This document shows, in pieces, positions 551-50,565 of a DNA stretch of 64,000 nt. The DNA lies in the IMG/VR virus record IMGVR_UViG_3300021963_000023, positions 1 through 64,000 of that record, one strand, 5' to 3'. The notes below the pieces were generated by a model, which worked only from the letters and a program-made list of their open reading frames with translations, was not told the origin of the DNA and made no database searches. The position numbers and the translations under genes were made by a program. Numbering within the stretch: the first letter of the stretch is position 1; every line of letters begins with the position of its first letter.

Positions 551-1051
551 ATGAAGTTTAAGGACATAATTAAGGACATTTTGATCGCTGAGAGTGAGGG
601 GCCGTCTGAACACGCAAAATGGGTTGCAAAACAAGTCTTGGTTAAGTTTATGTTTGCTGATTATAAAGAACAAAGGGGATTTGTTTGGGACTATGATCTT
701 GATGTGAGTGGGGTTTCTAATTTTGTTTTATCCGCCGGCGGTGCTGAGGATTATTACCTTCAGTATAACTTTGAAATTGATATTAGCTCATATCCTTCTT
801 ATACCCCAGCAACTTATGATGACCCAGGAGATTATGATCCCGCAGAATATGAAATTGAAATAAAACAAATTACCGTTTTTGATAACGATCAGATCATTTA
901 TGAGGGGCCAGACTTTACAAACTTCGCATCATTAAAAATTGGTGAGGTGGAATCCAGATATGGTCAAAACCGTATTAGTTATGGGGAAGGTTTTCTATAT
1001 GATTACTTTGGTGATAAAATTGAAGAAATATTAAGTGACAACGCAGACTAA
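551..1051 (+). CDS. acidic hypothetical protein with MKFKDII..E leader
   Basis: ATG at 551, 4 nt after TATTTATA; the ORF-track extension from 473 overlaps the terminator. Confidence 0.75.
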   Translation: MKFKDIIKDILIAESEGPSEHAKWVAKQVLVKFMFADYKEQRGFVWDYDLDVSGVSNFVLSAGGAEDYYLQYNFEIDISSYPSYTPATYDDPGDYDPAEYEIEIKQITVFDNDQIIYEGPDFTNFASLKIGEVESRYGQNRISYGEGFLYDYFGDKIEEILSDNAD

Positions 1052-1064
1052 AAAAATATAGTAT

Positions 1065-1178
1065 ATGGCAAACAAAAAGAAAAAACCCGTAGCTAAAAGA
1101 TCAAGAAGATCTGGGGTTAAAACAATGGAACTAGTTAAAAGAAATAACGAAATACTAAAAAAGTTTTTAACAAAATGA
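1065..1178 (+). CDS. 37-aa basic peptide (MANKKKKPVAKRSRRSG...)
   Basis: read by eye; fills the intergenic gap and its stop overlaps the next ATG (ATGA). Confidence 0.6.
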   Translation: MANKKKKPVAKRSRRSGVKTMELVKRNNEILKKFLTK

Positions 1179-1654
1179 AACAAACGTTAAACGAACAAGT
1201 TGCTAGAATTAAAGCTATGATGGTTCTTAAAGAACAACAGGAAATGACTCTTGAGCAATATATGGATGAGTTGTTAAAAGATCCTGTTGGGTTTTTAAAT
1301 AAATTAAATACTGATGAGCAATTTAAAAATGATTATATTAAATCTTACGGGCCGCAACAACCCGGTAATCCGAACAGAGCTATTTTGGAAAATGCTAAAA
1401 CTAAATTTATGATAAATAATGGGAGTACAATTACAGGACAGTTAAAAAATGATAAAACAAATGAGATTGTACTGAATTATGAAATATCCTCTTTAGATGA
1501 ATTTTTAAAATTAAACCAATTTATTAAAGATTATGAAGCAAAAGGAACACCTTTATTTGATGTAGGATTAGTAGGGCTTCTTAGAGATGTGAAAAATGGT
1601 AACGAGTTTGCTCAAGCTTTGAATATAGCAAGGGGTGCAAAGGTGTTCACATAA
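1175..1654 (+). CDS. hypothetical protein with MKQTLNEQVARIKAMM leader
   Basis: leader identical to that of the next gene. Confidence 0.8.
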   Translation: MKQTLNEQVARIKAMMVLKEQQEMTLEQYMDELLKDPVGFLNKLNTDEQFKNDYIKSYGPQQPGNPNRAILENAKTKFMINNGSTITGQLKNDKTNEIVLNYEISSLDEFLKLNQFIKDYEAKGTPLFDVGLVGLLRDVKNGNEFAQALNIARGAKVFT

Positions 1655-39719: not shown

Positions 39720-40116
39720 TGGTGGAGGTGACGGGACTCGAACCCGTGTCTTTCCTGTTCAACAATAAATGACTACACGTTTATTCAATTGGTTCTCAAC
39801 TGACAAATAGTAAATTAATTACAGGAAATTTACAATACTGTTTTTGACTGGATTTTCAAGAGCCGTCAAATTTGCTCCAACACTCTTCGGGTGGTATTAC
39901 ACCTTAAAGGCTTCTGTTCCTAGGTTATATGCCAGTCGACCCGATTGTAGTTTCGCCTTAGGCTACTGCTACGTTAGAAGTTGCAAGCAAGCCTGCTACT
40001 TCCATGTTGTTATAAACGTTGCCGTCTAAAATTTTCCACCATGTATTAAAGTCATAGATGAAGTCTGACTACGTGCCATTTACCCCTGATACCTGAAATC
40101 AATGCCAGGCACCCCC
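39720..40116 (-). ncRNA. ssrA: tmRNA, tag (A)GNVYNNMEVAGLLATSNVAVA*
   Basis: 5' GGGGGUG pairs with 3' CACCUCC-ACCA with G3.U70; GGUUCGAGUCC T-arm; UAGAC before the resume codon; tag ORF 40023-39958; 397 nt. Confidence 0.93.
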
Positions 40117-40119
40117 ATA

Positions 40120-40144
40120 TTTTAAAGAACTATTAGCAAATATA
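40120..40144 (-). promoter_or_regulatory. host-type -7 element + boxA-like motif upstream of tmRNA
   Basis: TATATTTG (40137-40144), AGTTCTTTAAAA (40120-40131). Confidence 0.6.
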
Positions 40145-40550: not shown

Positions 40551-41231
40551 TTACGCAATAGCTGGAAGCTCTTTTTCATATAAAGCCTCAAAAAATAGTT
40601 TATTTTTTTCCCATTGCTTATTAACCATACCGATGGATTTGTGAGTTAAACTGATCTTGGTTGTAACACCAATTTTAACACCTTCTTTGAAGTTCTCATA
40701 ACAAAATGAAATATCATAGAAGTGAAACCCTTTGAACTCCTCATTAAACTGTTTTTTCAGTCTTCTCCTGTCAACCATAAAGAATAAACCATCAACAACC
40801 ACAACAGGCTTTAAAACGTCCACAAAGGACCCTTTGGAGTAATGGTTAACGTGTCTTTTACCTTCATGAAGATGGCCAACAACACCAAACATATTATCTC
40901 TACTATCCCACCATCTTCCGCTTGTTAATTTATCGGTACCGGCTATACCGATAATACCATATTCAGAATGTTTTTGAAATAACTTAACTATTTTGGGAGT
41001 TATGTTAGCTGTCTCCAAAATAAGATCATCATGCATAAAAACAATAATATCATTTTTAGCTTCTTTTAGCCCTATGTTATAAATTTCAGTTAATGAATTA
41101 ACACCATCATTTTCATAAATTAATATTTCAGTTTTTGGGTGTGAAAACATTCTCTCAACATGTTTGAGATAAACATCATCAATTTTTCTTGTGGATATTA
41201 CCACCGTTACTACTTCGTTAGTCTTCGACAT
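40551..41231 (-). CDS. GT2-like glycosyltransferase
   Basis: YN.G...IIVFMHDD, GIIGIAG, VVVDGLF, GFHFYD. Confidence 0.75.
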   Translation of the reverse strand: MSKTNEVVTVVISTRKIDDVYLKHVERMFSHPKTEILIYENDGVNSLTEIYNIGLKEAKNDIIVFMHDDLILETANITPKIVKLFQKHSEYGIIGIAGTDKLTSGRWWDSRDNMFGVVGHLHEGKRHVNHYSKGSFVDVLKPVVVVDGLFFMVDRRRLKKQFNEEFKGFHFYDISFCYENFKEGVKIGVTTKISLTHKSIGMVNKQWEKNKLFFEALYEKELPAIA

Positions 41232-41967
41232 ATGTTGCTATTATTTGTCCGTCATATTCTTTTAATTCTACAACGATTGGTTTATTAATTGGGTTATAAC
41301 CCGGATTACAAATTGAGGCGTTTACAAATAATGTATCATCAACTTGTTTATCACCATACCCTTCATGAATATGACCAAACACATTTAATGCTGGTTTAAC
41401 ACGTTCCACATGGAACCTGAGTAATTCACAACCAACATTTACATTGGGTTGTCTCCAATTATTAACAAGATCTAATATACCATTTGGTGGACCATGTGTA
41501 ATTAATACGTCGGTATCTTCCGGAATCATCAACCACTTCTCTTCTAATTCTTTCCCTGATCTTTCCAAATTAAATGCCCAATCATAAAACCATGGTTGCC
41601 ATGGCGATCCATAAATTTTAATAGGTCTTGAAAATTCTGGTCTTTCAATTATCATAAAATCATCTTCCAAATAATATACATCAGATTGTGCTAAATTCTC
41701 TGGCGCCATTAAATTACGTAACCAATCATAATCACGTTTGTGATGTGGTTTATTAACTTGTTCAAAACAATGATCATGATTACCTGAAATGAAAATCTTA
41801 GCATCAAATCCTTGAATGTTTTGAAACCAATAGATAAACTTGGTAACATCCTTTTCTCCTCCTCTATTTGAGATGTCACCAGCATGGATCAATATGTCTC
41901 CTGATGGAATTTCATGCAACATATTATCATGCAAGCTATGCGTATCTGATATACAAACTATTCTCAT
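41218..41967 (-). CDS. calcineurin-like metallophosphoesterase
   Basis: SDTH, HAGD, GNHD, THGPP, FGHIHE. Confidence 0.9.
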   Translation of the reverse strand: MRIVCISDTHSLHDNMLHEIPSGDILIHAGDISNRGGEKDVTKFIYWFQNIQGFDAKIFISGNHDHCFEQVNKPHHKRDYDWLRNLMAPENLAQSDVYYLEDDFMIIERPEFSRPIKIYGSPWQPWFYDWAFNLERSGKELEEKWLMIPEDTDVLITHGPPNGILDLVNNWRQPNVNVGCELLRFHVERVKPALNVFGHIHEGYGDKQVDDTLFVNASICNPGYNPINKPIVVELKEYDGQIIATYVED

Positions 41968-41998: not shown

Positions 41999-42649
41999 TC
42001 AAATAATTTTCTTATTTTCTTTTCTATTGGTAAATAACATTTTATCGAATTTAACGAATTCAATCTTATTTTTATCTAGTACGTGTGATAACCCCAATCC
42101 CTCTCCATTACCGTTACCAATATATTGAGACGGCACTACAGTGCTTATCCAATCAAATATTGGTTTTATCTTTTCAAGATCAAATAAAACTTGTGACACA
42201 TTATTAATATTGGGAAAATAGAAAATCCACTCTAGTGGTAATTTTAAATGATTGTATTCTATTTTATTTAAATTAAAATAAAACAATAAATCTTTCCAAT
42301 AAAAGTCTTCAATATAGTTTATAAAAAGATCATTTTCCCAGTTGTCATAATAAAGTACATTTTTATCACCGGAAAAGTTTTTTATAAATTCATCATTTAC
42401 ATTACCTATCCAATCAGAGTCAATATATAACACATCTGTTTTATGCTTTTCTATTAACCTAAGTGAAAAAATTAATTTATCAAAATATGAAAAAATCTTA
42501 TTTTCATATAGTTGAGTATCATATCCAGTAAAAAAATTGGGGTTATCTGTTAATATTTTAATATCATATCCACGTTTTTTAAATCTATCTAAATGTGGTA
42601 AGCAAATTTTAGCATATTGTTCACCAACAGCAACAATTGATAAAATCAT
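41999..42649 (-). CDS. glycosyltransferase-like protein
   Basis: ILTDNP, YIDSD DxD motif. Confidence 0.5.
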   Translation of the reverse strand: MILSIVAVGEQYAKICLPHLDRFKKRGYDIKILTDNPNFFTGYDTQLYENKIFSYFDKLIFSLRLIEKHKTDVLYIDSDWIGNVNDEFIKNFSGDKNVLYYDNWENDLFINYIEDFYWKDLLFYFNLNKIEYNHLKLPLEWIFYFPNINNVSQVLFDLEKIKPIFDWISTVVPSQYIGNGNGEGLGLSHVLDKNKIEFVKFDKMLFTNRKENKKII

Positions 42650-43791
42650 TATATTAGACTTGAATTTTTTGTGAATATGGTATTATTGGTTATTTTCTCA
42701 TATAACAATTCTGCTTCCGAATATTTTGGTAATTTTAACCCTGGGTATATTTCTGCAAAATATTTGTGAACATTAATAACATACTCTTCACCAAATGTTT
42801 CGATTATTTCATTTATAACAATAACCTGCCATAGTTGATACCATTGCATAAATGAAAAATGGGTATACCCAAAGAATTTAAAATTAAGCATGTTTTTTAT
42901 ATCATCAATTGACACTATAGTGTGATCATTTAATTTTTGTTCATTACAGCACGAGCATCTAGATGTTGTTCTAAAATCAAACGGGAATTGTGTTTTGTAT
43001 ATACTAGGATTTGTTTTGGCTTGAGTTTCAAGGGTAATGGATAATGGAACATCTTTAAACAAAAATGTTTCATCTTTTTTAACCAGTTCTTTATAGTCTG
43101 ACTCACCAGACAAAAGATATTGATGTATCATTAATTGTTCTATATAACAAGGGCCCATTTCTTGTTTATCAATGACTTCCTTATTTTCATAATAATGTGC
43201 AATAGCTTGTTCACACGCAATTTTAAAATTTTTGTGATCTCTAACCAACACAATACTCATGTTTGGTATATGGGTGAAATTAAAATTAGTTTTAAGTTCT
43301 GTTGAATGTTTATCAAAAAGATCTAGGTATAATTTTAAATAAACGTGATTAATCCAAAAGTGATTATGACTATTTAATTTTTCATCTTTATTATTAATTA
43401 AAAACGGTATATGCTCACCTAAAGTACCTTTCATATTACTTAAGTGTTTCATATCCGGATGCGAGAATAAAAAAGAAGATTTAATTTGAGTGAAATCAAC
43501 CTTAGAAAAGAAAACGGAGTCCGTATCAATATGTAAAAAGGGTTCTTCTATTTCCTTATATGTGTAGATCTTGCTTAAGCTATATTGTGTGCAGTCTACG
43601 TTGTTTAATAATTCAGTGTTAATGGTTGTGTATGGGACACCAATTTTAGTTATTTGCTTCGCTTCTATTTCTGTTGTATATAGATGTATATTCCCATAAT
43701 GTTTTTTAGCATATAATGCACTCAGCATTTGAATGTATATCCTTTCTTTCCATATAATTTCTCTGGATGCAAATGTGTGAACTATTTTCAT
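42649..43791 (-). CDS. glycosyltransferase-like protein (DUF6734-like)
   Basis: HYGNIHLYT, KIYTY...EPFLHIDTD, IEQ. Confidence 0.55.
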   Translation of the reverse strand: MKIVHTFASREIIWKERIYIQMLSALYAKKHYGNIHLYTTEIEAKQITKIGVPYTTINTELLNNVDCTQYSLSKIYTYKEIEEPFLHIDTDSVFFSKVDFTQIKSSFLFSHPDMKHLSNMKGTLGEHIPFLINNKDEKLNSHNHFWINHVYLKLYLDLFDKHSTELKTNFNFTHIPNMSIVLVRDHKNFKIACEQAIAHYYENKEVIDKQEMGPCYIEQLMIHQYLLSGESDYKELVKKDETFLFKDVPLSITLETQAKTNPSIYKTQFPFDFRTTSRCSCCNEQKLNDHTIVSIDDIKNMLNFKFFGYTHFSFMQWYQLWQVIVINEIIETFGEEYVINVHKYFAEIYPGLKLPKYSEAELLYEKITNNTIFTKNSSLI

Positions 43792-43823
43792 AATAAAATA
43801 TACACATTTTTTAAATAAAAAAC

Positions 43824-43851
43824 AAAAAAAAAGTCAGAATTTCTTCTGACT
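43824..43851 (-). terminator. intrinsic terminator downstream of the large ncRNA
   Basis: AGTCAGAA-GAAA-TTCTGACT followed by a T-tract. Confidence 0.7.
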
Positions 43852-43926
43852 GGTTTTTCTTAAGGCCGAACGGTTTTAAAACGTTCCAATTCCACCACTT
43901 TGTTTTATTAAACAAAGAAAATAAAA

Positions 43927-44728
43927 AGGCTGAGATTACACCATTTAACGATTGACTTTGAGACATTATTTTTTTCTTCTCTTATCCACTACCTTTTGAG
44001 TAGTACCAATCAGCGACGGTCAATTAGATTAACCAATCCTTAAGTCGTTAGATACTCTTTTAATACTTATTACTCTTCGAGGTTGCCACCCCAATTAGTC
44101 CTTGCGGGACTAGAGAACTTTCTCAAAAATCATGTTGGGCTTGGGACCCCTTCATGGCCGAGAACCTCTCTCGACTGTGTAGTCACCTGTCTCCAACGAC
44201 TGACGAGCACTTTTCCTTTATTGTTTGTAGTTGTTAAACCAAAATTAACAAAGTTTGTTGGTTCCGAATGTGGAAAGTAGCGGCTCGTCTGCCAGCCAAG
44301 CCACCTTTTGAGCGACTCGATACTAAACTACTCTCTGAGATATCCCTATCTCCATATTTTTGGACTCCTTCGAAATTAAACTCTTGGTAGAATTTAACTA
44401 AGGATGACAACAGCACCACCTGTTTTTCACCATACCTTTCGGTTTTAAGACGCCCCTAATATTGAATCACACAATTATAAGATTGGAAATCCTACTTCTC
44501 GTAATAACTCTACAGATTATTCTTATTGGTGTTCCCACCTCAATCAAACAACTCGGATTGCTTGATCATCGAACCACTTTCCCTACAGTGTTACCCTCAG
44601 TACTTAAGGTTCAACGATATTCTGCTTGCCTACTCAAGATCCATTACTGAATCCGCAAAACACTTAACCAAATGCTTCACTTTATCCCACTTTCATGGTT
44701 TATTTTAATCGACCATAGGCGGCCAATA
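43927..44728 (-). ncRNA. large (~800 nt) structured ncRNA, GOLLD-like
   Basis: no credible ORF; GC-richer than flanks; many hairpins (ACC-GAAA-GGT, TAGTCC-CGCAA-GGACTA, CTAC-TCAAAAG-GTAG); own promoter and terminator; next to a phage tRNA array; size fits GOLLD; ends approximate. Confidence 0.65.
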
Positions 44729-44734
44729 TTTTTA

Positions 44735-44815
44735 AATCAAAGAACTATTTCTTGTTTTAGAAACCATCTATCTGATTTCTTTTACAAAGATACATAACAT
44801 TTTTGAAAAAACAAA
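44735..44815 (-). promoter_or_regulatory. Bacteroidetes promoter + boxA-like motif
   Basis: TTTG(44812-15)-N19-TATCTTTG(44785-92); AGTTCTTTGATT (44735-46). Confidence 0.7.
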
Positions 44816-44838
44816 CACTTTGTAAAAAATATTTTTTT

Positions 44839-45300
44839 TTATATTCTAACTAGGTGATTTGCGGCATAGGTTGTTAATGCGCCTAGGTGTTTATACCTAA
44901 CTTTATACCCCATACCTTCAACCATTCCAACAGCTTGTCTAAGAACAGAGTTTGACTTAAACCTTGAATCTGGATTTAAATCAATATCTATCCATGTTGG
45001 CTTTGGCAAACCGTTCTCTTTTAGATATTCCGCAATTTCAATGGATTTCCAAACTTCATTTAACAACCTAATTGGCATGTTATATTCCATTGGTAAAATC
45101 TCTTTATTACATAAAACGTGTGCACCTTTACCTGGAGTATATAGTGCAATCACAACACCATAAATTGTTTTTTTATGACCATAGCATTGTGAATCTGATC
45201 CAATAAGAATTTCCACCCCACTTCTTAGTGAAACATATTCTTTGATGTAATTGATTACATCTGGTACTGGTGTCCCGTAGAGTGTTTTAAATTCTTTCAT
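44839..45300 (-). CDS. RNase H-like YkuK/DUF458 family protein
   Basis: IGSDSQ, GKGA, RLLNEVWKS, IDIDLN, AANH. Confidence 0.8.
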   Translation of the reverse strand: MKEFKTLYGTPVPDVINYIKEYVSLRSGVEILIGSDSQCYGHKKTIYGVVIALYTPGKGAHVLCNKEILPMEYNMPIRLLNEVWKSIEIAEYLKENGLPKPTWIDIDLNPDSRFKSNSVLRQAVGMVEGMGYKVRYKHLGALTTYAANHLVRI

Positions 45301-45327
45301 TTTTTTTTAATTTAATTCATTTTATTG

Positions 45328-45499
45328 CTGTGGTAGCAGGATTCGAACCGTGCAGATGGAGATTCAATTAGTAACAAAGCGCTTGCAAGCCGGTGGTCTA
45401 CCCCGATATTACTAATCTATTTCTTTGTCCACGTCCGGGAGACAACCGGATGCGTTTGCCAAGGTCATAACTGAGACAACCAAATTTCGCCATACCACA
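45328..45499 (-). ncRNA. giant tRNA-like RNA (GUC anticodon, D-loop insert, ~80-nt variable arm)
   Basis: 7-bp acceptor UGUGGUA/UACCACA, UCCGG/CCGGA anticodon stem, GGUUCGAAUCC. Confidence 0.65.
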
Positions 45500-45593
45500 A
45501 TATTTGAACTAACTCGCTGGAAACCTTATAACTGATCTGATCAGCTTATGGGTTAAGTACTCCGTTTATGTTAGTTCCTCGTACTCCAAGTTG

Positions 45594-45677
45594 CGGAGAG
45601 TACTGGATTCGAACCAGTGCACCGATTGCTCGATGACAGTTTAGCAAACTGCTCCATTACCGCTCTGGCAACTCTCC
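45594..45677 (-). tRNA. tRNA-Ser(GCT)
   Basis: cloverleaf with long variable arm. Confidence 0.9.
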
Positions 45678-45682
45678 TAAAT

Positions 45683-45982
45683 TTATTTTTTAACTTTTCT
45701 TTTATTTAAAAATTCATAAAACTTATTTTCATAGTTTATAAAGTGTGTCATAGCAAACCATTTACCAAAAACACTACCACCTATATAAACAATAATAACA
45801 ACCCAATCACTTGCAAATAATCTTTCTAATGAAAAATATATTGAACCCAAAGAAACGAGATTAATCCATATTGAATTGAATACAAGTTGCTTAACCTTAT
45901 TCTCATAGGTATATTTTATTTCCATTGTTTTAAAAATGTTGAATAATACCTGAAAGAAAAACACTAATACATATAACCACAT
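45683..45982 (-). CDS. small three-TM membrane protein
   Basis: hydrophobic ORF between tRNAs. Confidence 0.7.
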   Translation of the reverse strand: MWLYVLVFFFQVLFNIFKTMEIKYTYENKVKQLVFNSIWINLVSLGSIYFSLERLFASDWVVIIVYIGGSVFGKWFAMTHFINYENKFYEFLNKRKVKK

Positions 45983-45998
45983 AACATCATTTTTTTTG

Positions 45999-46069
45999 TT
46001 GTCCCTCTAGGATTCGAACCTAAACAAACTGCACCAAAAACAGTTGTGCTACCGTTACACCAAAGGACA
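45999..46069 (-). tRNA. tRNA-Gln(TTG)
   Basis: cloverleaf. Confidence 0.88.
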
Positions 46070-46134
46070 ATATAATCATCACGGAGAATGTAGATTTTCA
46101 CTAACTCGATTTAGCGGCCTCTATGATGATTTTG

Positions 46135-46207
46135 AGCGAATAACAGGCTTCGAACCTGCAACCCCCAGTTTGGAAAACTAGTGCTCTACCAATTGAGCTA
46201 CATTCGC
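46135..46207 (-). tRNA. tRNA-Gly(TCC)
   Basis: cloverleaf. Confidence 0.9.
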
Positions 46208-46305
46208 ATTCATAGTAGGTATGTGAGTACCCACCTCACAACACTACTACGTTTTAATGGATGAAAAACATCTATCTTTCTTTCGGGCTACCATTAAGCC
46301 CCATG

Positions 46306-46379
46306 AGCTTCCTGTCAGAATCGAACTGACGACCTACTGATTACAAATCAGTCGCTCTGGCCTGCTGAGCTAAGGAAGC
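46306..46379 (-). tRNA. tRNA-Thr(TGT)
   Basis: cloverleaf. Confidence 0.9.
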
Positions 46380-46384
46380 GTTTG

Positions 46385-46458
46385 TGGACCAGCCTGGGCT
46401 CGAACCAGGGACCTATTCATTATGAGTGAAGTGCTCTAACCAACTGAGCTACAAGTCC
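46385..46458 (-). tRNA. tRNA-CAT (Ile2 or Met)
   Basis: cloverleaf, CTCATAA loop, Ile-like body. Confidence 0.85.
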
Positions 46459-46464
46459 AAAAGG

Positions 46465-46583
46465 TGCCGGTGGAAGGATTGCTTACCTCCACGGTGTCCA
46501 TTTCGGATACACCACCTATCTAGAATACGGGACGTCTAATAATTTCTATTCGAATTCAAAATTATTCATTCCGCCACACCGGC
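46465..46583 (-). ncRNA. aberrant tRNA-Leu-like RNA with D-loop hairpin insert and probable CUA anticodon
   Basis: GCCGGUG/CACCGGC acceptor, A73, long variable arm, loop UUCUAGA, non-canonical T-loop. Confidence 0.55.
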
Positions 46584-46591
46584 ATATATCT

Positions 46592-47131
46592 TTACTCTAC
46601 ATTAGTTGTTGGATCATACTGAAATTTAATATGTGTGAATCCAAGTTCTAAATTATTCGTTATTTCAATTTTATCTTCGTCAATGTTATATGAACACATG
46701 TCACAATTCCAAAGCGAATTCCTTAATCCTTCTTTAAATTTTTTCATGTCTTTAATCCCAATTAAATTAAACACACATTCTAAAGTTTCTGGTAGATATT
46801 TTTTTTCTAAAAACTTGTTATGATTAAAATATGCTTCCCATTTTTCTTTGTTTCCTGAATCACCTCTTTCATGTGTGCAACTGTTAAACCACTCATCATC
46901 TAGTCTATTATTTTCAATTTCATCTTTTTCACTTACCTTAATAACTTTTCTTGAATGGATCATATCAGTTGATAATGTTGGGAGGTGATTATCGACAATA
47001 TTTTCGCCAATATAATATCCTAATTGGTAATCCATACTTACATTCTCAAGATACTCTTCATTTTTTTTAATTTGACCAATCTTATATTCTGGTTTTTTTA
47101 TTTCTTCTAATATTTCTTCAAGCGATCTCAT
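46592..47131 (-). CDS. hypothetical protein
   Basis: 179-aa ORF within the tRNA array. Confidence 0.75.
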   Translation of the reverse strand: MRSLEEILEEIKKPEYKIGQIKKNEEYLENVSMDYQLGYYIGENIVDNHLPTLSTDMIHSRKVIKVSEKDEIENNRLDDEWFNSCTHERGDSGNKEKWEAYFNHNKFLEKKYLPETLECVFNLIGIKDMKKFKEGLRNSLWNCDMCSYNIDEDKIEITNNLELGFTHIKFQYDPTTNVE

Positions 47132-47158
47132 GTTAATTAAATTTATTTCATTTTATTG

Positions 47159-47239
47159 TTGGGATAGACGGACTCGAACCGCCGAACTCGATGAGAGCTG
47201 ATTTACAGTCAGCCGCAATTGCCACTATGCGATATCCCA
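47159..47239 (-). tRNA. tRNA-Tyr(GTA)
   Basis: cloverleaf with variable arm. Confidence 0.88.
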
Positions 47240-47247
47240 ATTTAATG

Positions 47248-47329
47248 TGACCAAGGAGAGACTCGAACTCTCAAGCCTTACGGCACCAGATCCTAAATCT
47301 GGCGTGTCTACCAATTCCACCACTCGGCC
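47248..47329 (-). tRNA. tRNA-Leu(TAG)
   Basis: cloverleaf. Confidence 0.92.
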
Positions 47330-47336
47330 ATTGTTG

Positions 47337-47409
47337 CGCTCCCTGAGGGTCACGATCCCCCGACCCCAAAATTAACAGTTTTGTGCTCTACCAACTGAGC
47401 TAAGGAAGC
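47337..47409 (-). tRNA. tRNA-Asn(GTT)
   Basis: cloverleaf; atypical T-loop ATCGTGA. Confidence 0.82.
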
Positions 47410-47414
47410 GAATG

Positions 47415-47489
47415 TAGGGTAAAGAGGACTCGAACCTCCACGATGTCTTGCTCCCAAAGCAAGCGGCCTAGCCATTGGCCCATTACCCT
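47415..47489 (-). tRNA. tRNA-Pro(TGG)
   Basis: cloverleaf. Confidence 0.85.
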
Positions 47490-47496
47490 ATTTTAG

Positions 47497-47570
47497 TGAT
47501 TCGGAAAGGATTCGAACCTTTGACCCCAAACTTAGAAGGTTTGTGCTCTATCCAGCTGAGCTACCGAACC
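47497..47570 (-). tRNA. tRNA-Arg(TCT)
   Basis: cloverleaf. Confidence 0.92.
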
Positions 47571-47685
47571 AATTAATGTAATGTCTGTACGGTTTGTATC
47601 AAATCCGCACCTTTATACGTGCTTCAAATGTTTCCATTTCATACATAGCGTCCGTTCCGTCACCTATTTCTAAGTCATTACATTG

Positions 47686-47770
47686 TACCTGGGGCGGGAC
47701 TTGAACCCGCACGGAACTTTCGTCCCAACAGATTTTAAGTCTGTCATGTATACCATTTCATCACCCAGGC
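47686..47770 (-). tRNA. tRNA-Leu(TAA)
   Basis: cloverleaf. Confidence 0.9.
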
Positions 47771-47786
47771 ATTTGTTTTTCCAATA

Positions 47787-47833
47787 TGTCAAAGAACTTT
47801 ATCAAATATAAGAATAATAAATTATAAAACAAA
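47787..47833 (-). promoter_or_regulatory. Bacteroidetes promoter + boxA
   Basis: TTTG-N19-TATATTTG (47803-47833), then AGTTCTTTGACA (47787-47798). Confidence 0.72.
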
Positions 47834-47863
47834 AAACCCGAACATTTTTAGTTGTTCGGGTTT
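47826..47863 (-). terminator. terminator of putative attenuator 2
   Basis: AAACCCGAACA/TGTTCGGGTTT plus T-tract. Confidence 0.75.
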
Positions 47864-47884
47864 CGATATTAGTTAAAAAAAGTA

Positions 47885-47992
47885 TTATCCTTTATTGATA
47901 TCCGAACATATGTAGCATAATGGTTGCACACCATACCCATTACCATTGTTAAGGGGTCTCGTACTTGTCAATATGTTATTTATATTCTTCAT
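47885..47992 (-). CDS. 35-aa putative leader peptide MKNINNILTSTRPLNNGNGYGVQPLCYICSDINKG
   Basis: read by eye; lies between a TATCTTTG promoter (48011-48018) and a terminator. Confidence 0.55.
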   Translation of the reverse strand: MKNINNILTSTRPLNNGNGYGVQPLCYICSDINKG

Positions 47993-48041
47993 CGTTTTAA
48001 TAAGTATACGCAAAGATAAGAAAAAACTGAATACTAAAAAA

Positions 48042-48455
48042 TTATTTTATTTTATAAGATAAACCAATTCCTGGTGAAAAATTAGAACCCACTAAATTTC
48101 CTATTATCCATAGTTTCAAATCAGAAGATTTTAATGCGTTATACCCAATAAATGCGTTTATCTTGTTTTCGTTATTAACTGGTTGTATACCAGCCCCGAT
48201 TAAAATTTTATCGGGTTGTAACATTTTTAAAATTCCTAATTTTAAATTCGACGTGATTGAACCAGTTTTTTGGTTTGCCAAATTTGTGTCATTGTAAGGT
48301 GCTCCGACGTATAACCCCCACGTGTTTTTTAATGCGCCGACCGTAATGTAACCATCTAATCCTTTGTTTGTTGCTGATACGAACACTTCTTTTTGTCCGT
48401 AGGTCACTGCCTTCACTCCCAATAGCATCATGACCAATATAATTTTTAGTTTCAT
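48042..48455 (-). CDS. small secreted beta-strand/barrel-like protein
   Basis: signal peptide; C-terminal GIGLSYKIK. Confidence 0.65.
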   Translation of the reverse strand: MKLKIILVMMLLGVKAVTYGQKEVFVSATNKGLDGYITVGALKNTWGLYVGAPYNDTNLANQKTGSITSNLKLGILKMLQPDKILIGAGIQPVNNENKINAFIGYNALKSSDLKLWIIGNLVGSNFSPGIGLSYKIK

Positions 48456-48512
48456 CTATGTAGAGACCGTAGTCTCTGTCTATCTTAATAAATATAAAGA
48501 TAAATTTGTTTG

Positions 48513-48584
48513 TACTCGGTACGGGATTCGAACCCGTGCTACGTCCGTGAAAGGGACGCGACCTAACCACTAGTCGAACCGAGC
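48513..48584 (-). tRNA. tRNA-Glu(TTC)
   Basis: cloverleaf. Confidence 0.92.
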
Positions 48585-48589
48585 AATCA

Positions 48590-49018
48590 TTAATGATTTT
48601 TATGATTACCCTTGTGATTATCAATTAAAGGAAATTTTAAACCAAACGTTTTTAATTCTTTATCAGTTGATTGAGAATAAACAAAACTAATTGGAGAATT
48701 TTTTATTGGTTTAAAATCAATACCCCACATTGCCATAGTTGAGTGATTTTGCATATAACAAGCGGATAGCATTGCCCCAACTCTATTTTTTAAAAATCCA
48801 TATCTACTTCCCACCATTGTAATATCATAACCACCAATCGTTTTTGTAAAAGATATATGGGCCGCAATGTTTTTTGTTATGTTTTGCATTGCTTCAACTT
48901 CTATATAACCTTTATTCTTTCCGTGTAGATTTAGATTACCTCCCGTAACCGAAATCATTTGTCCTTTTGCAATTGTAGAAAGAAATACAACACATAGGAT
49001 TAAAAATGAATGTTTCAT
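48590..49018 (-). CDS. small secreted beta-strand/barrel-like protein
   Basis: signal peptide; alternating beta pattern, TFGLKFPL. Confidence 0.65.
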   Translation of the reverse strand: MKHSFLILCVVFLSTIAKGQMISVTGGNLNLHGKNKGYIEVEAMQNITKNIAAHISFTKTIGGYDITMVGSRYGFLKNRVGAMLSACYMQNHSTMAMWGIDFKPIKNSPISFVYSQSTDKELKTFGLKFPLIDNHKGNHKNH

Positions 49019-49035
49019 ATATTTTATTTTTTTTT

Positions 49036-49125
49036 TGGCGGAGGCTCAGGGATTCGAACCCCAGATACCGTTTCCGGTATGACGGTTTTCAAGACCGTTC
49101 CATTCAACCACTCTGGCAAGCCTCC
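49036..49125 (-). tRNA. tRNA-Ser(TGA)
   Basis: cloverleaf, encoded CCA. Confidence 0.93.
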
Positions 49126-49148
49126 ATTAAAGGAACAAAAATTCAAGG

Positions 49149-49222
49149 CGGACTGTACGGGACTCGAACCCGTGAACTCTACCGTGACAGGGTAGCATGA
49201 TAACCAACTTCACCAACAATCC
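49149..49222 (-). tRNA. tRNA-Asp(GTC)
   Basis: cloverleaf. Confidence 0.9.
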
Positions 49223-49224
49223 GT

Positions 49225-49492
49225 GTTTGATCCTAACTCAGCTTAAGTTGCTCCATCCAAGTCTTGCTCTGGTTAACAAAGTCCTCGATGAGTTAGTTTC
49301 AAATAAAATAACAAGTTTTTCGTACGCTTTTGTACATCATAACCGATTATTTCTAACCGGTGGTTACATTTTCGTCAATTGGTTAATTACTCCCGACTTA
49401 TTGTAACTCTACCCACACCGCTTTAATACCGCGAATCAAGACGGCTTTTCGGGATTTATATACCGTGGGCTTCCACCACAGTCGTCACCTGT
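49225..49492 (-). ncRNA. candidate ~265-nt ncRNA
   Basis: no credible ORF; own TTTG-N19-TATATTTG promoter (49497-49527); local hairpins. Confidence 0.45.
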
Positions 49493-49535
49493 TATACAAA
49501 TATAAATTAAATTTTTTAAAATTCAAAATATATTT

Positions 49536-49608
49536 TGGTTGCGGAGCCAAGAATCGAACTTGGATGCACAGGCTTATGATACCTGGCGGGTTACCTAACC
49601 TCTCCGCA
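49536..49608 (-). tRNA. tRNA-Met(CAT) with reduced D-arm
   Basis: UGCGGAG/CUCCGCA acceptor, CAT loop, TTCGA, encoded CCA. Confidence 0.75.
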
Positions 49609-49611
49609 ATA

Positions 49612-49688
49612 TGGGGTGATCGACGAGATTCGAACTCGCTTTATTCTAGCGCCACAAGCTAGTGCTCTACCATACGAGCATCGATCAC
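49612..49688 (-). tRNA. tRNA-His(GTG)
   Basis: cloverleaf, C73, CCA. Confidence 0.88.
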
Positions 49689-49690
49689 AG

Positions 49691-49761
49691 AGTCAAGTAT
49701 TGGATTCGAACCAATGTACGAGGTTTTGCAGACCTCTACCTAACCACTCGGCCAACCTGAC
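49691..49761 (-). tRNA. tRNA-Cys(GCA)
   Basis: cloverleaf, U73. Confidence 0.9.
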
Positions 49762-49821
49762 TTTTTGTTCACTTATGTTCTCTGTTCACGGACCGTGAAC
49801 AAACAAAATTTGTGAACACTG

Positions 49822-49893
49822 AGGTCTCTAAAGGATTTGAACCCTTACTTCAACGTCCGTAGCGTTGCGTGCTATCCGTTACACCAAAAGACC
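49822..49893 (-). tRNA. tRNA-Arg(ACG)
   Basis: cloverleaf. Confidence 0.88.
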
Positions 49894-49897
49894 AATT

Positions 49898-50101
49898 TTA
49901 CTTCCATTGAGTTTTTCGGTTATACTTCCAACCTCTATACTCTCTTCTTTTATGGGATTCAATCGGTTTCCCGTTACCGTGTCTTCCATGAACAAAAGTT
50001 GGGGAACAGTCATAATACCAACTTCCGTTTCTTTTCTGACATATGAAACAATAGTTGTGTGATTGTTTCTTTGCTTTTACTTTGTACTCTTTGTTTGTCA
50101 T
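49898..50101 (-). CDS. small basic Cys/His protein
   Basis: CFIC...C...H; co-oriented with the tRNAs. Confidence 0.55.
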   Translation of the reverse strand: MTNKEYKVKAKKQSHNYCFICQKRNGSWYYDCSPTFVHGRHGNGKPIESHKRREYRGWKYNRKTQWK

Positions 50102-50180
50102 ATTGCATTAGTTTAACTAATGCTGGTCATATTTCTTTTTCATACTTTACAAATTGTAAGTGTTTTACTTTACATATTAT

Positions 50181-50254
50181 TGGCACGGGTGGAGAGATTC
50201 GAACTCCCATCGACGGTTTTGGAGACCGGAATGCTACCATTGCACCACACCCGT
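50181..50254 (-). tRNA. tRNA-Trp(CCA)
   Basis: cloverleaf, CCA. Confidence 0.9.
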
Positions 50255-50259
50255 GTATG

Positions 50260-50333
50260 TGATCCCTACAAGACTCGAACTTGTGACTCCCTCATTAAAA
50301 GTGAGGTGCTCTAGCCAACTGAGCTAAGAGATC
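50260..50333 (-). tRNA. tRNA-Lys(TTT)
   Basis: cloverleaf. Confidence 0.92.
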
Positions 50334-50338
50334 AATTG

Positions 50339-50411
50339 TGGAGAAAGTTGGTTACGCTCCAACTCCTAAGGATTTTCAGTCCTTCGCTTCTACTAAGTTA
50401 GCTTCATCTCC
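50339..50411 (-). tRNA. tRNA-Phe(GAA)
   Basis: cloverleaf; atypical T-loop AGCGTAA. Confidence 0.78.
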
Positions 50412-50416
50412 TTATG

Positions 50417-50489
50417 TTGGAATGATAAGACTCGAACCTATAACCTTCCGCGTATCAGGCGGATGCTCTCACCATTGAGCTACATTCCA
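50417..50489 (-). tRNA. tRNA-Ile(GAT)
   Basis: cloverleaf, loop CTGATAC. Confidence 0.85.
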
Positions 50490-50492
50490 ATT

Positions 50493-50565
50493 TGGTGGAC
50501 ACGTAGGGAATCGAACCCTTTCACTCTGATTGCAAATCAGGTGGTCTGCCATTGACATCCGGCCC
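50493..50565 (-). tRNA. tRNA-Ala(TGC)
   Basis: G3.U70, TGC loop, CCA; imperfect acceptor stem. Confidence 0.75.

What the first reader, a model, noticed from the sequence alone, without database searches (positions are those of the whole stretch)
43927..44728. ~800-nt ornate ncRNA (GOLLD-like) with its own promoter, boxA and terminator
Seen: a long ORF-free, hairpin-rich unit at the distal end of the tRNA island, with an A-rich linker (~44210-44260) separating two structured halves. Known: GOLLD RNAs are ~800 nt, occur in phages and lake metagenomes near tRNA genes, and have unknown function. The family call rests on size, context and recalled motifs, not on a search. An RNase H-fold YkuK gene lies directly upstream and is a possible processing or binding partner.
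Basis: partly seen in the sequence, partly recalled or inferred. Interest (0 to 1): 0.66.

Follow-up and report, generated by a model that had tools for sequence, protein, structure and literature searches.

The report
GOLLD RNA gene of a jumbo phage
The ORF-free stretch is a true, highly expressed member of the known GOLLD family of giant phage RNAs (which form RNA-only cages), so the family call is right and ordinary; what may be new is that it is built like a small ribosomal-RNA operon.

Summary
Confirmed. Rfam's GOLLD model (RF02032) matches window 43927-44335 on the minus strand over its full length (314 bits, cut-off 150, E 4e-89). No other large-RNA family, including ROOL, reaches its cut-off.

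The 5' half (44336-44725) has no Rfam model. At least 106 IMG/VR phage contigs share it, and covariation supports it: 111 pairs, 97.5% paired, 83 with compensatory changes.

Contigs from four metatranscriptome studies cover only about 43930-44706. The flanking protein genes have zero coverage, so the unit accumulates as RNA.

- Promoter: a Bacteroidota-type promoter (TTTG, 19 nt, TATCTTTG).
- boxA: GTTCTTTGA is invariant in 88 of 94 relatives. The same 9-mer lies 40-200 nt upstream of 16S rRNA in 75 of 139 sampled Bacteroidota genomes.
- Terminator: a hairpin followed by T9.
- Linker: A-rich and variable.
- Upstream gene: a PF04308 (YkuK-type) protein.

YkuK is not a conserved partner, because only 10 of 119 GOLLD loci have one.

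This is a new member of a known family. GOLLD's function is still unknown. The rRNA-style leader, and the apparent trimming of that leader, were absent from the searchable literature and are the only modestly new points.

The parts
44812..44815 (-). -33 element TTTG of a Bacteroidota-type promoter
   Evidence: Read from the sequence. It lies 19 nt upstream of the -7 box. A TTG or TTTG stands at similar spacing in relatives. That this promoter architecture is typical of Bacteroidota is from my own knowledge.
44785..44792 (-). -7 box TATCTTTG (TAnnTTTG); transcription start inferred near 44780-44777
   Evidence: TAnnTTTG is present upstream in 91 of 94 unique homologues. This block is a conserved island in otherwise unconserved flank. 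The start site was not mapped.
44759..44780 (-). Small leader hairpin (AGAAATC...GGTTTCT), in the position of boxB
   Evidence: Read from the sequence. A hairpin of differing sequence lies between the -7 box and boxA in 79 of 88 homologues.
44737..44745 (-). boxA, GTTCTTTGA
   Evidence: Exact in 88 of 94 homologues, a median of 28 nt after the -7 box. The identical 9-mer lies 40-200 nt upstream of the 16S 5' end in 75 of 139 sampled Bacteroidota genomes that show a 16S start; the reversed control gave 0. It matches the gamma-proteobacterial consensus GYTCTTTAANA at positions 1-7 and 9. The window's only other exact copy precedes a tRNA array.
44710..44725 (-). Conserved 5' hairpin; its 6-nt loop GCCUAU (44720-44715) pairs with GUAGGC at 44633-44628
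   Evidence: The stem pair at alignment columns 27/42 covaries (GC35 UG6 UA6 CG3 AU1). All six loop-to-distal pairs are kept in 51-52 of 52 sequences, two of them with compensatory changes (UA39/CG13; GC33/CG14/AU5). RNA contigs stop just 3' of this hairpin.
43930..44706 (-). The RNA species that accumulates, as seen in metatranscriptomes (about 777 nt)
   Evidence: Contigs from four RNA runs of four studies cover only this span, including pieces with no mismatch. Depth falls at least 700-fold in the next bin upstream, and the flanking protein genes have zero depth. An Illumina adapter abuts 43931 in run X15. Contigs are weak evidence for exact ends.
44336..44709 (-). GOLLD 5' domain (variable between GOLLD lineages; no Rfam model)
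   Evidence: An nhmmer profile finds the same domain in 106 of 119 pattern-selected phage contigs, and most of the rest are cut off by the end of the locus. Together with the 5' hairpin (44710-44725), this domain has 111 RNAalifold pairs: 97.5% are paired, against 83.5% with shuffled partners and 35-42% with slid partners, and 83 show double changes.
43927..44335 (-). GOLLD conserved 3' part: one hairpin, the linker and the 3' domain (Rfam RF02032)
   Evidence: 314.4 bits against a gathering score of 150, E 3.6e-89, model positions 1-416 of 416, not truncated. The search of the window's own genome gave the same result, and this is the only copy in the 251-kb record.
44221..44272 (-). Variable A-rich linker (J13/15 of the published GOLLD consensus)
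   Evidence: Unpaired in the Rfam consensus, the least conserved part of the RNA, and 40-47% A. In the solved env-38 GOLLD, the equivalent linker is disordered inside the cage.
43832..43851 (-). Intrinsic terminator hairpin, followed by T9
   Evidence: Found by the consensus scan. A non-homologous hairpin plus T-run lies within 160 nt downstream in 65 of 94 homologues, a median of 40 nt away.
44839..45300 (-). Upstream neighbour gene, a 153-aa PF04308 RNaseH_like (YkuK-type) protein; not shown to belong to the RNA unit
   Evidence: Pfam 61.9 bits against a cut-off of 25. No RNA coverage in any of the four runs. Present in only 10 of 119 GOLLD loci.

Best explanation
This is the gene for a GOLLD RNA carried by a freshwater jumbo phage. 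The record is 251 kb and estimated 75% complete; relatives reach 324-334 kb. The host is probably a Bacteroidota bacterium.

Shown here:
- The 3' part is a full-length GOLLD by covariance model.
- The 5' domain is a conserved, covarying structure shared by more than 100 phage contigs.
- The unit accumulates as RNA in lake and estuary metatranscriptomes, while its protein-coding neighbours do not.

Inferred from conserved sequence:
- It is its own transcription unit, read by host RNA polymerase from a Bacteroidota-type -33/-7 promoter.
- The leader carries a small hairpin followed by boxA, which is identical to the boxA in the rRNA-operon leaders of that phylum.
- boxA most likely recruits the host Nus factors (NusB/NusE and partners). 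These would make transcription of this long, untranslated, highly folded RNA resistant to Rho termination and would chaperone its folding, as they do for rRNA.
- Transcription ends at a hairpin plus T-run about 75 nt past the RNA.
- The precursor then appears to be trimmed at both ends to about 777 nt.

Inferred by homology to the solved env-38 GOLLD:
- The RNA assembles without protein into a closed homo-oligomeric cage, with the A-rich linker inside.

My guess about function, held at low confidence: made in very high copy during lytic growth, the cage sequesters or scaffolds a component of the translation or tRNA machinery. That would fit its placement beside the phage's tRNA island and tmRNA.
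For: - Identity: RF02032 at 314 bits, full length. Relatives score 274-323 bits, including the 634-kb phage LR745206.1.
- Structure: 202 consensus pairs, 151 with compensatory changes.
- Expression: six RNA runs from four studies hold the stretch. Contigs cover only 43930-44706, with zero depth on 42000-43745 and 44910-45297.
- Promoter, leader and boxA. The window's only other exact copy of the boxA 9-mer precedes a tRNA array, and a one-mismatch copy precedes the tmRNA.
- The boxA 9-mer lies upstream of 16S in 75 of 139 sampled Bacteroidota genomes with a detectable 16S start; the reversed control gave 0.
- Terminator.
- Cage formation and the interior linker in the family: Kretsch et al. 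2025 and the review PMC12990946.
Against: - Function is unknown for the whole family. A GOLLD in a Lactobacillus brevis prophage was reported dispensable for phage production (cited in PMC7567579).
- Nus-factor binding, the transcription start and the processing sites were not measured.
- The RNA ends rest on assembled contigs, which the tool warns cannot prove a start or an end.
- The conserved 5' hairpin, whose loop pairing covaries with the body, lies outside the covered span. This is odd if the hairpin is simply discarded.
- Oligomeric state differs between solved GOLLDs: 14-mer for env-38, and 8-, 10- or 12-mers for the Streptococcus 3' domain. It cannot be read from sequence.
- The GTTCTTTGA form of boxA is, from my memory, not unique to Bacteroidota, so it does not fix the host by itself.
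- No GOLLD was found in 151 sampled Bacteroidota genomes.
Confidence: 0.85

Rival explanations
1. The RNA is not an independent unit. It is the tail of a long read-through transcript from the tRNA island and the YkuK gene, released only by processing.
For: It is on the same strand as all 21-22 tRNAs and YkuK. No terminator-like site lies between the YkuK stop (44839) and the RNA. Weinberg et al. 2017 suggested that GOLLD and tRNAs may be co-transcribed.
Against: A promoter block is conserved in 91 of 94 homologues at a fixed distance from boxA, in loci whose upstream genes differ. Only 9 of 119 GOLLD loci have a tRNA within 1.5 kb. The YkuK gene has zero RNA depth next to depths of hundreds to tens of thousands on the RNA.
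Confidence: 0.1
2. YkuK (PF04308, RNase H-like fold) is the dedicated processing nuclease or binding partner of this GOLLD, and the two form a conserved module.
For: The two are directly adjacent on the same strand. In 29 of 75 phage loci found with the YkuK protein, a GOLLD lies within 3 kb, always on the same strand. The RNA does appear to be trimmed.
Against: Searching from the GOLLD side, only 10 of 119 loci hold any PF04308-like ORF, by tblastn and by a family HMM, and only 3 have one within 1.3 kb upstream; those 3 show the highest YkuK identity (69-80%). Among YkuK homologues at 67-71% identity, several have no GOLLD within 3 kb; in more distant ones the GOLLD lies upstream instead. This pattern fits shared gene order among related jumbo phages. 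No solved relative and no NCBIfam model inform the function.
Confidence: 0.06
3. The mature RNA includes the conserved 5' hairpin and starts at about 44726 or further upstream. The contig ends at 44705/44706 are artefacts of assembling many co-occurring variants.
For: The hairpin stem and its six loop-to-body pairs covary like a functional part of the fold. The contigs are short and fragmented (76-325 nt), and the tool states that contigs cannot show ends.
Against: Three runs with different library types end at the same base, 44705 or 44706. The bin 44716-44909 has depths of 0.17, 2.6, 0 and 0, against 127, 6462, 55 and 43325 in the adjacent bin. The only variable insertion site in that region lies exactly at this junction.
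Confidence: 0.25
4. The region is a decayed or non-functional GOLLD remnant, or the apparent RNA signal is DNA carry-over in the RNA libraries.
For: None specific. RNA libraries can contain DNA, as the output warns.
Against: The model match is full length with no truncation. Pairs are kept in 97.5% of cells across relatives 62-86% identical to the window. Coverage is confined to the RNA and is zero on 1.7 kb of flanking phage DNA on one side and 0.4 kb on the other, which DNA carry-over would not produce.
Confidence: 0.02

Closest known systems
GOLLD RNA (Rfam RF02032; Weinberg et al. 2009; cryo-EM of env-38 GOLLD, Kretsch et al. 2025)
   Same: Full-length covariance-model match to the conserved 3' part. 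Total size is about 800 nt. It has a separate structured 5' domain and a variable unpaired linker. It is phage-encoded, lies beside a tRNA island, and comes from lake or aquatic samples.
   Different: Nothing that excludes membership. The 5' domain belongs to one particular lineage, shared by at least 106 IMG/VR contigs and the 634-kb phage LR745206.1. I could not align it to env-38 or to the Streptococcus GOLLD, because no sequence reference for them was available. The promoter, hairpin and boxA leader and the apparent end-trimming are not described for GOLLD in the library searched.
Bacterial rRNA operon leader (boxB-boxA antitermination signal; Nus-factor complex)
   Same: The order is promoter, small hairpin, boxA, then a long untranslated structured RNA. 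The boxA 9-mer is identical to the one upstream of 16S in sampled Bacteroidota genomes. The leader is apparently removed from the stable product.
   Different: There is no leader-trailer helix of the kind RNase III cuts in rRNA precursors (mean z +0.36). No boxC was sought. The product is a phage RNA, not rRNA. Nus-factor binding was not tested.
ROOL RNA (the other phage-borne cage-forming giant RNA)
   Same: The genomic setting is the same (phages, near tRNAs), and both families form RNA-only cages.
   Different: No ROOL match at the gathering threshold anywhere in the window. The published sequence and fold are unrelated.

Membership tests
GOLLD (RF02032) | Covariance-model score at or above Rfam's gathering score (150 bits) | tested here: met
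   314.4 bits, E 3.6e-89; the search of the window's own genome gave the same score.
GOLLD (RF02032) | All helices of the universally conserved 3' region present | tested here: met
   Model positions 1-416 of 416 are aligned, not truncated, with only two marked non-canonical pairs. The 89 pairs of this part are 97.7% kept across 52 relatives.
GOLLD (RF02032) | Total length about 800 nt, with a separate, less conserved but structured 5' domain | tested here: met
   The conserved span is about 44745-43925. The 5' domain has 111 covarying pairs.
GOLLD (RF02032) | Variable unpaired linker (J13/15) between the hairpin after the 5' domain and the 3' domain | tested here: met
   44272-44221 is unpaired in the model, the least conserved part, and 40-47% A.
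GOLLD (RF02032) | Phage or prophage location, often beside tRNA genes | tested here: met
   The source is an IMG/VR virus record of 251 kb. 21-22 tRNAs and a tmRNA lie within 7 kb on the same strand.
GOLLD (RF02032) | The two hairpin loops that make symmetric kissing contacts between half-shells in env-38 (L21a with a GC/CG dinucleotide; L21b conserved) | tested here: inconclusive
   Both adjacent hairpins of the model (loops GCAA and GGCA, window about 44110-44075) are present. Among relatives the first loop switches between CGCAAG and a GUCGAAG form. Mapping these hairpins to L21a and L21b is my inference from the residue numbers given.
GOLLD (RF02032) | Protein-free assembly into a closed homo-oligomeric cage | not testable with these tools
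   Known for env-38 (14-mer) and the Streptococcus 3' domain (8-, 10- or 12-mers). It needs mass photometry or cryo-EM.
GOLLD (RF02032) | Accumulates as RNA (reported to rise during lytic growth) | tested here: met
   RNA contigs in four studies are confined to the unit. Timing relative to lysis cannot be tested here.
ROOL | Covariance-model match at the gathering score | tested here: not met
   The scan of all 4227 Rfam families over the window lists no ROOL match.
rrn-type boxA antitermination signal | Sequence agrees with the boxA of the rRNA leader in the relevant bacteria | tested here: met
   GTTCTTTGA lies 40-200 nt before the 16S 5' end in 75 of 139 sampled genomes of one Bacteroidota-rooted phylum sample that show a 16S start; the reversed control gave 0. 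It agrees with GYTCTTTAANA at positions 1-7 and 9, including the critical C4.
rrn-type boxA antitermination signal | Lies in the transcribed leader, downstream of the promoter and upstream of a long untranslated RNA, and is conserved | tested here: met
   88 of 94 homologues have it, a median of 28 nt after the -7 box. The same arrangement precedes a tRNA array and the tmRNA in this phage.
rrn-type boxA antitermination signal | Binds NusB/NusE and suppresses Rho-dependent termination | not testable with these tools
   Needs binding and reporter assays.
PF04308 RNaseH_like (YkuK-type) protein, neighbour gene | Pfam score at or above the curated cut-off | tested here: met
   61.9 bits against 25, covering profile positions 2-141 of 145. 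That Bacillus subtilis YkuK belongs to this family is from my own knowledge.

The most novel reading that the evidence does not exclude
In this large clade of aquatic phages, GOLLD RNA is made the way a cell makes ribosomal RNA. A conserved rrn-type hairpin-boxA leader recruits the host Nus antitermination and chaperone complex. A leader hairpin pairs transiently with the body (44720-44715 with 44633-44628) to guide folding. The leader is then cut off to give the roughly 777-nt subunit of the cage. The same boxA stands in front of a phage tRNA array and the phage tmRNA. If this holds, the phage runs a small 'stable-RNA regulon' on borrowed rRNA machinery, and cage assembly may be co-transcriptionally controlled.
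Probability: 0.4. Interest if true: 0.55.

Novelty: new member of a known kind. Interest (0 to 1): 0.35.

Why it matters
GOLLD is one of the largest bacterial or phage non-coding RNAs. It is now known to build RNA-only cages larger than a ribosome, yet its function is still unknown.

This locus adds no new family, but it offers a well-defined natural example:
- clear transcription signals;
- more than 100 alignable relatives that share the same 5' domain;
- direct evidence of very high abundance in environmental RNA.

If the rRNA-style leader is functional, it gives a testable handle on how such a cage RNA is made and folded in cells. It also points to Bacteroidota as hosts in which to study it. 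The negative result on YkuK removes a tempting but unsupported partner.

Tried and rejected
- YkuK as a conserved partner: rejected on co-occurrence. 10 of 119 GOLLD loci have one, and 29 of 75 YkuK loci have a GOLLD nearby.
- The DUF6734 downstream gene as a partner: 0 of 119 loci.
- An rRNA-like leader-trailer helix for RNase III: no signal (RNAduplex mean z +0.36 against shuffles, n=88).
- sigma-70-type promoter scan: no excess over shuffles, with only weak sites. The promoter call rests instead on the conserved Bacteroidota-type motif.
- Loose promoter-plus-boxA pattern over genome contigs: mostly chance hits in all phyla. Only 3 of 120 lay before a 16S gene. It was replaced by the targeted test.
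- The two other promoter-plus-boxA-like sites in the phage genome (31445-31406 and 118982-118960): they look like chance matches without an RNA gene behind them.
- GOLLD in host genomes: not found in 151 sampled genomes of that phylum, so there is no prophage link to a host.
- Literature linking GOLLD to boxA or antitermination: none relevant in the library.
- Solved structures and NCBIfam for YkuK: no match.
- Near-identical phage records: the 'phages' collection holds only two partial matches.
- I did not pass a long dot-bracket string to the count of structure pairs. I ran the equivalent controls in a script instead.
- I could not align the 5' domain to the solved env-38 or Streptococcus GOLLDs, because no sequence reference for them was available. 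That step is left out.
- One genome search and two paper-reading runs failed on argument format.

Full report
**What is there**

The stretch 43927-44728 lies on the minus strand of a 251,149-bp IMG/VR virus record that CheckV rates about 75% complete. A scan of the whole window against all 4227 Rfam families gives one large-RNA hit. It is GOLLD (RF02032) at 43927-44335, minus strand, 314.4 bits against a gathering score of 150, E 3.6e-89. Model positions 1-416 of 416 are aligned and nothing is truncated. It is the only copy in the record. ROOL and all other large-RNA families are absent at their thresholds. The Rfam model covers only the universally conserved 3' part of GOLLD.

**Surroundings**

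Upstream on the same strand lie 21-22 tRNA genes (45593-50565). Between them and the RNA is a 153-aa ORF (44839-45300) that matches Pfam PF04308 RNaseH_like at 61.9 bits, against a cut-off of 25. Downstream lie a DUF6734 protein (42649-43791), an unassigned ORF, a metallophosphoesterase, and a tmRNA at 39720-40116. The longest ATG ORF on the RNA strand inside the unit is 12 aa.

**Relatives and the 5' domain**

An nhmmer profile built from the window's 5' half finds the same 5' domain in 106 of them. Nearly all the others are simply cut off by the end of the locus.

Ninety-three unique full-length homologues are 62-86% identical to the window. Conservation starts near 44745 and ends near 43925, with a separate conserved island at 44800-44781.

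An alignment of 52 diverse members (A1) gives an RNAalifold consensus of 202 pairs, of which 151 show at least one compensatory double change. My own controls for the 5' domain alone (111 pairs) are as follows:

| Measure | Observed | Shuffled partners | Partner slid by 1-3 columns |
|---|---|---|---|
| Cells paired | 97.5% | 83.5% (maximum 84.4%) | 35-42% |
| Pairs with double changes | 83 | not computed | 23-38 |

Representative relatives score 274-323 bits on RF02032. They include the 634,780-bp 'uncultured phage' LR745206.1, which has the same 5' domain downstream of tRNAs.

**Expression**

Six metatranscriptome runs from four studies hold the stretch, as do at least 14 DNA runs from lake, estuary and other aquatic samples. 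I laid the contigs of four RNA runs, one per study, on 42000-47800.

- Coverage is confined to 43930/43931-44705/44706 and includes pieces with no mismatch.
- Summed contig depths in the four runs reach about 127, 6460, 55 and 43300.
- The DUF6734 gene (42000-43745) and the YkuK gene (44910-45297) have zero depth in all four runs.

DNA carry-over cannot produce this pattern, so the unit accumulates as RNA. Neither is found.

**Transcription signals**

Upstream of the RNA the sequence reads TTTG (44815-44812), 19 nt, then TATCTTTG (44792-44785). From my own knowledge, this is the -33/-7 architecture of Bacteroidota sigma-A promoters.

- TAnnTTTG is present upstream in 91 of 94 unique homologues.
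- In 88 of 94, an invariant GTTCTTTGA follows it after a median of 28 nt.
- In 79 of those 88, a small hairpin of varying sequence lies between the two.
- A variable spacer of 8-92 nt then leads to the first conserved hairpin of the RNA.

In the window these elements are the hairpin at 44780-44759 and GTTCTTTGA at 44745-44737.

**Is the 9-mer a boxA?**

It agrees with the published gamma-proteobacterial consensus GYTCTTTAANA at positions 1-7 and 9, including the critical C at position 4.

As a direct test, I sampled 201 genomes from the phylum of a Lentimicrobiaceae genome. Of these, 139 show a 16S 5' end. In 75 of the 139, the exact 9-mer lies 40-200 nt upstream of that end. The reversed-pattern control found none. 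The motif is therefore the rrn-leader boxA of that phylum.

Within the window the only other exact copy (47797-47789) sits 5 nt after a TATATTTG box and 18 nt before the tRNA-Leu(taa) array. A one-mismatch copy, GTTCTTTAA (40130-40122), sits between a TATATTTG box and the 5' end of the tmRNA. Three stable-RNA units of this phage thus share the same promoter-plus-boxA arrangement.

**Terminator**

A hairpin at 43851-43832 followed by T9 lies about 75 nt past the Rfam 3' end. Of 94 homologues, 65 have a non-homologous hairpin plus T-run within 160 nt downstream, a median of 40 nt away.

**Ends of the stable RNA**

Contigs in three runs end at 44705 or 44706. The next bin upstream (44716-44909) has depths of 0.17, 2.6, 0 and 0. 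At the other end, contigs stop at 43930 or 43931, and an Illumina adapter abuts 43931 in one run.

This suggests a stable species of about 777 nt, with the boxA leader and the trailer up to the terminator removed. The tool warns that contigs cannot prove ends, so I treat this as suggestive.

One observation does not fit well. A conserved hairpin at 44725-44710 lies just outside the covered span. Its closing pair covaries (GC35, UG6, UA6, CG3, AU1). Its six-base loop GCCUAU (44720-44715) pairs with GUAGGC (44633-44628) in 51-52 of 52 sequences at every one of the six positions. Two of those positions show compensatory changes, UA39/CG13 and GC33/CG14/AU5. The only variable insertion site in this region lies exactly between this hairpin and the body.

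I see three possible readings:
- The hairpin is a leader element that pairs with the body during folding and is then cut off.
- It stays attached non-covalently.
- The contig ends mislead.

A leader-trailer helix of the rRNA kind is not present (mean z +0.36, n=88).

**The YkuK idea**

- Starting from YkuK, 29 of 75 phage loci have a GOLLD within 3 kb, always on the same strand. It lies downstream in the close relatives and upstream in some distant ones. It is absent in many, including several at 67-71% identity.
- Starting from GOLLD, only 10 of 119 loci hold a PF04308-like ORF by tblastn or by a family HMM. Only 3 have one within 1.3 kb upstream.

This is shared gene order among related jumbo phages, not a conserved module. 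The gene also shows no RNA coverage next to the RNA.

Proximity to tRNAs is also looser in this clade than the textbook picture. A tRNA lies within 1.5 kb in 9 of 119 loci, and anywhere in the fetched locus in 40 of 119.

**How it most likely works**

Three things are shown: the identity, the conserved fold and the accumulation as RNA. The rest is inferred.

Host RNA polymerase starts at the Bacteroidota-type promoter. The nascent leader presents boxA to the host Nus factors, which protect an 800-nt untranslated transcript from Rho and help it fold, as in rRNA operons. That mechanism is from published work on E. coli; I saw only the titles and abstracts listed. Transcription stops at the intrinsic terminator, and the ends are trimmed.

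By homology with the solved GOLLDs, the RNA then assembles without protein into a closed cage with the variable A-rich linker inside. The two adjacent hairpins that I take to correspond to the equatorial kissing loops of env-38 are both present, but that mapping is my inference.

What the cage does is unknown for the whole family. Published ideas include enclosing tRNAs or ribosomes. One prophage GOLLD was reported dispensable. I favour a role connected with translation or tRNA supply during lytic growth, at low confidence.

**Comparison and novelty**

This is a member of GOLLD by every testable criterion. The setting, a lake phage beside tRNAs, is the family's classic one. I found no paper linking GOLLD to boxA or antitermination in the searchable library. 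The rRNA-style leader, its sharing with the phage's tRNA array and tmRNA, and the apparent trimming are therefore possibly new but incremental.

No GOLLD was found in 151 sampled genomes of the presumed host phylum. The host assignment rests on the promoter type and the boxA match only.

Noticed in passing
window 39720-40144 (-): A phage tmRNA (80 bits; tag peptide GNVYNNMEVAGLLATSNVAVA). It is preceded by a terminator hairpin, a TATATTTG -7 box (40144-40137) and a boxA-like GTTCTTTAA (40130-40122), only 5 nt before the tmRNA 5' end. This is the same promoter-plus-boxA layout as the GOLLD unit.
   Followed up: partly
window 47770-47810 (-): TATATTTG (47810-47803), then the window's only other exact GTTCTTTGA (47797-47789), then the tRNA-Leu(taa) array. 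The first tRNA array (start near 50565) has a terminator upstream but no such motif.
   Followed up: partly
window 44147: All four RNA runs carry contigs lacking one base here relative to the window, in a G/C homopolymer inside a 3'-domain hairpin. It is either a strain variant or a homopolymer error in the assembled contig.
   Followed up: no
window 44449-44517: RNA contigs in three runs join 44449 to 44517, skipping 67 nt, which is about one hairpin of the 5' domain. The flanking matches are short (19-28 nt). They probably come from co-occurring GOLLD variants rather than from splicing.
   Followed up: no
L319 (LR745206.1, 634,780 bp) 982-1387 (-): One of the very large 'uncultured phage' genomes carries a full GOLLD (287 bits) with the same 5' domain type, directly downstream of tRNA genes. 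The record has no annotation.
   Followed up: partly
A1 columns 44-76: L071:2229-3087, L113:4233-5091, L153:3858-4697: Three homologues have one or two extra GC-rich hairpins inserted exactly between the conserved 5' hairpin and the body. This is the same junction where the RNA contigs of the window's variant end.
   Followed up: no
window 42649-43791 (-) and 41218-41967 (-): The downstream neighbours are a DUF6734 protein (380 aa) and a calcineurin-like metallophosphoesterase (249 aa). Neither recurs next to GOLLD in other loci; DUF6734 was found in 0 of 119.
   Followed up: partly
L165:1-6447: In a more distant relative, the GOLLD (1613-2027 for the 3' part) sits inside a dense array of more than 20 tRNAs, with tRNAs on both sides. 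In the window it sits at the end of the island.
   Followed up: no
runs X18 and X19: The RNA is also recovered in libraries labelled PolyA. That could reflect priming on A-rich stretches or polyadenylated decay products. This was not examined.
   Followed up: no
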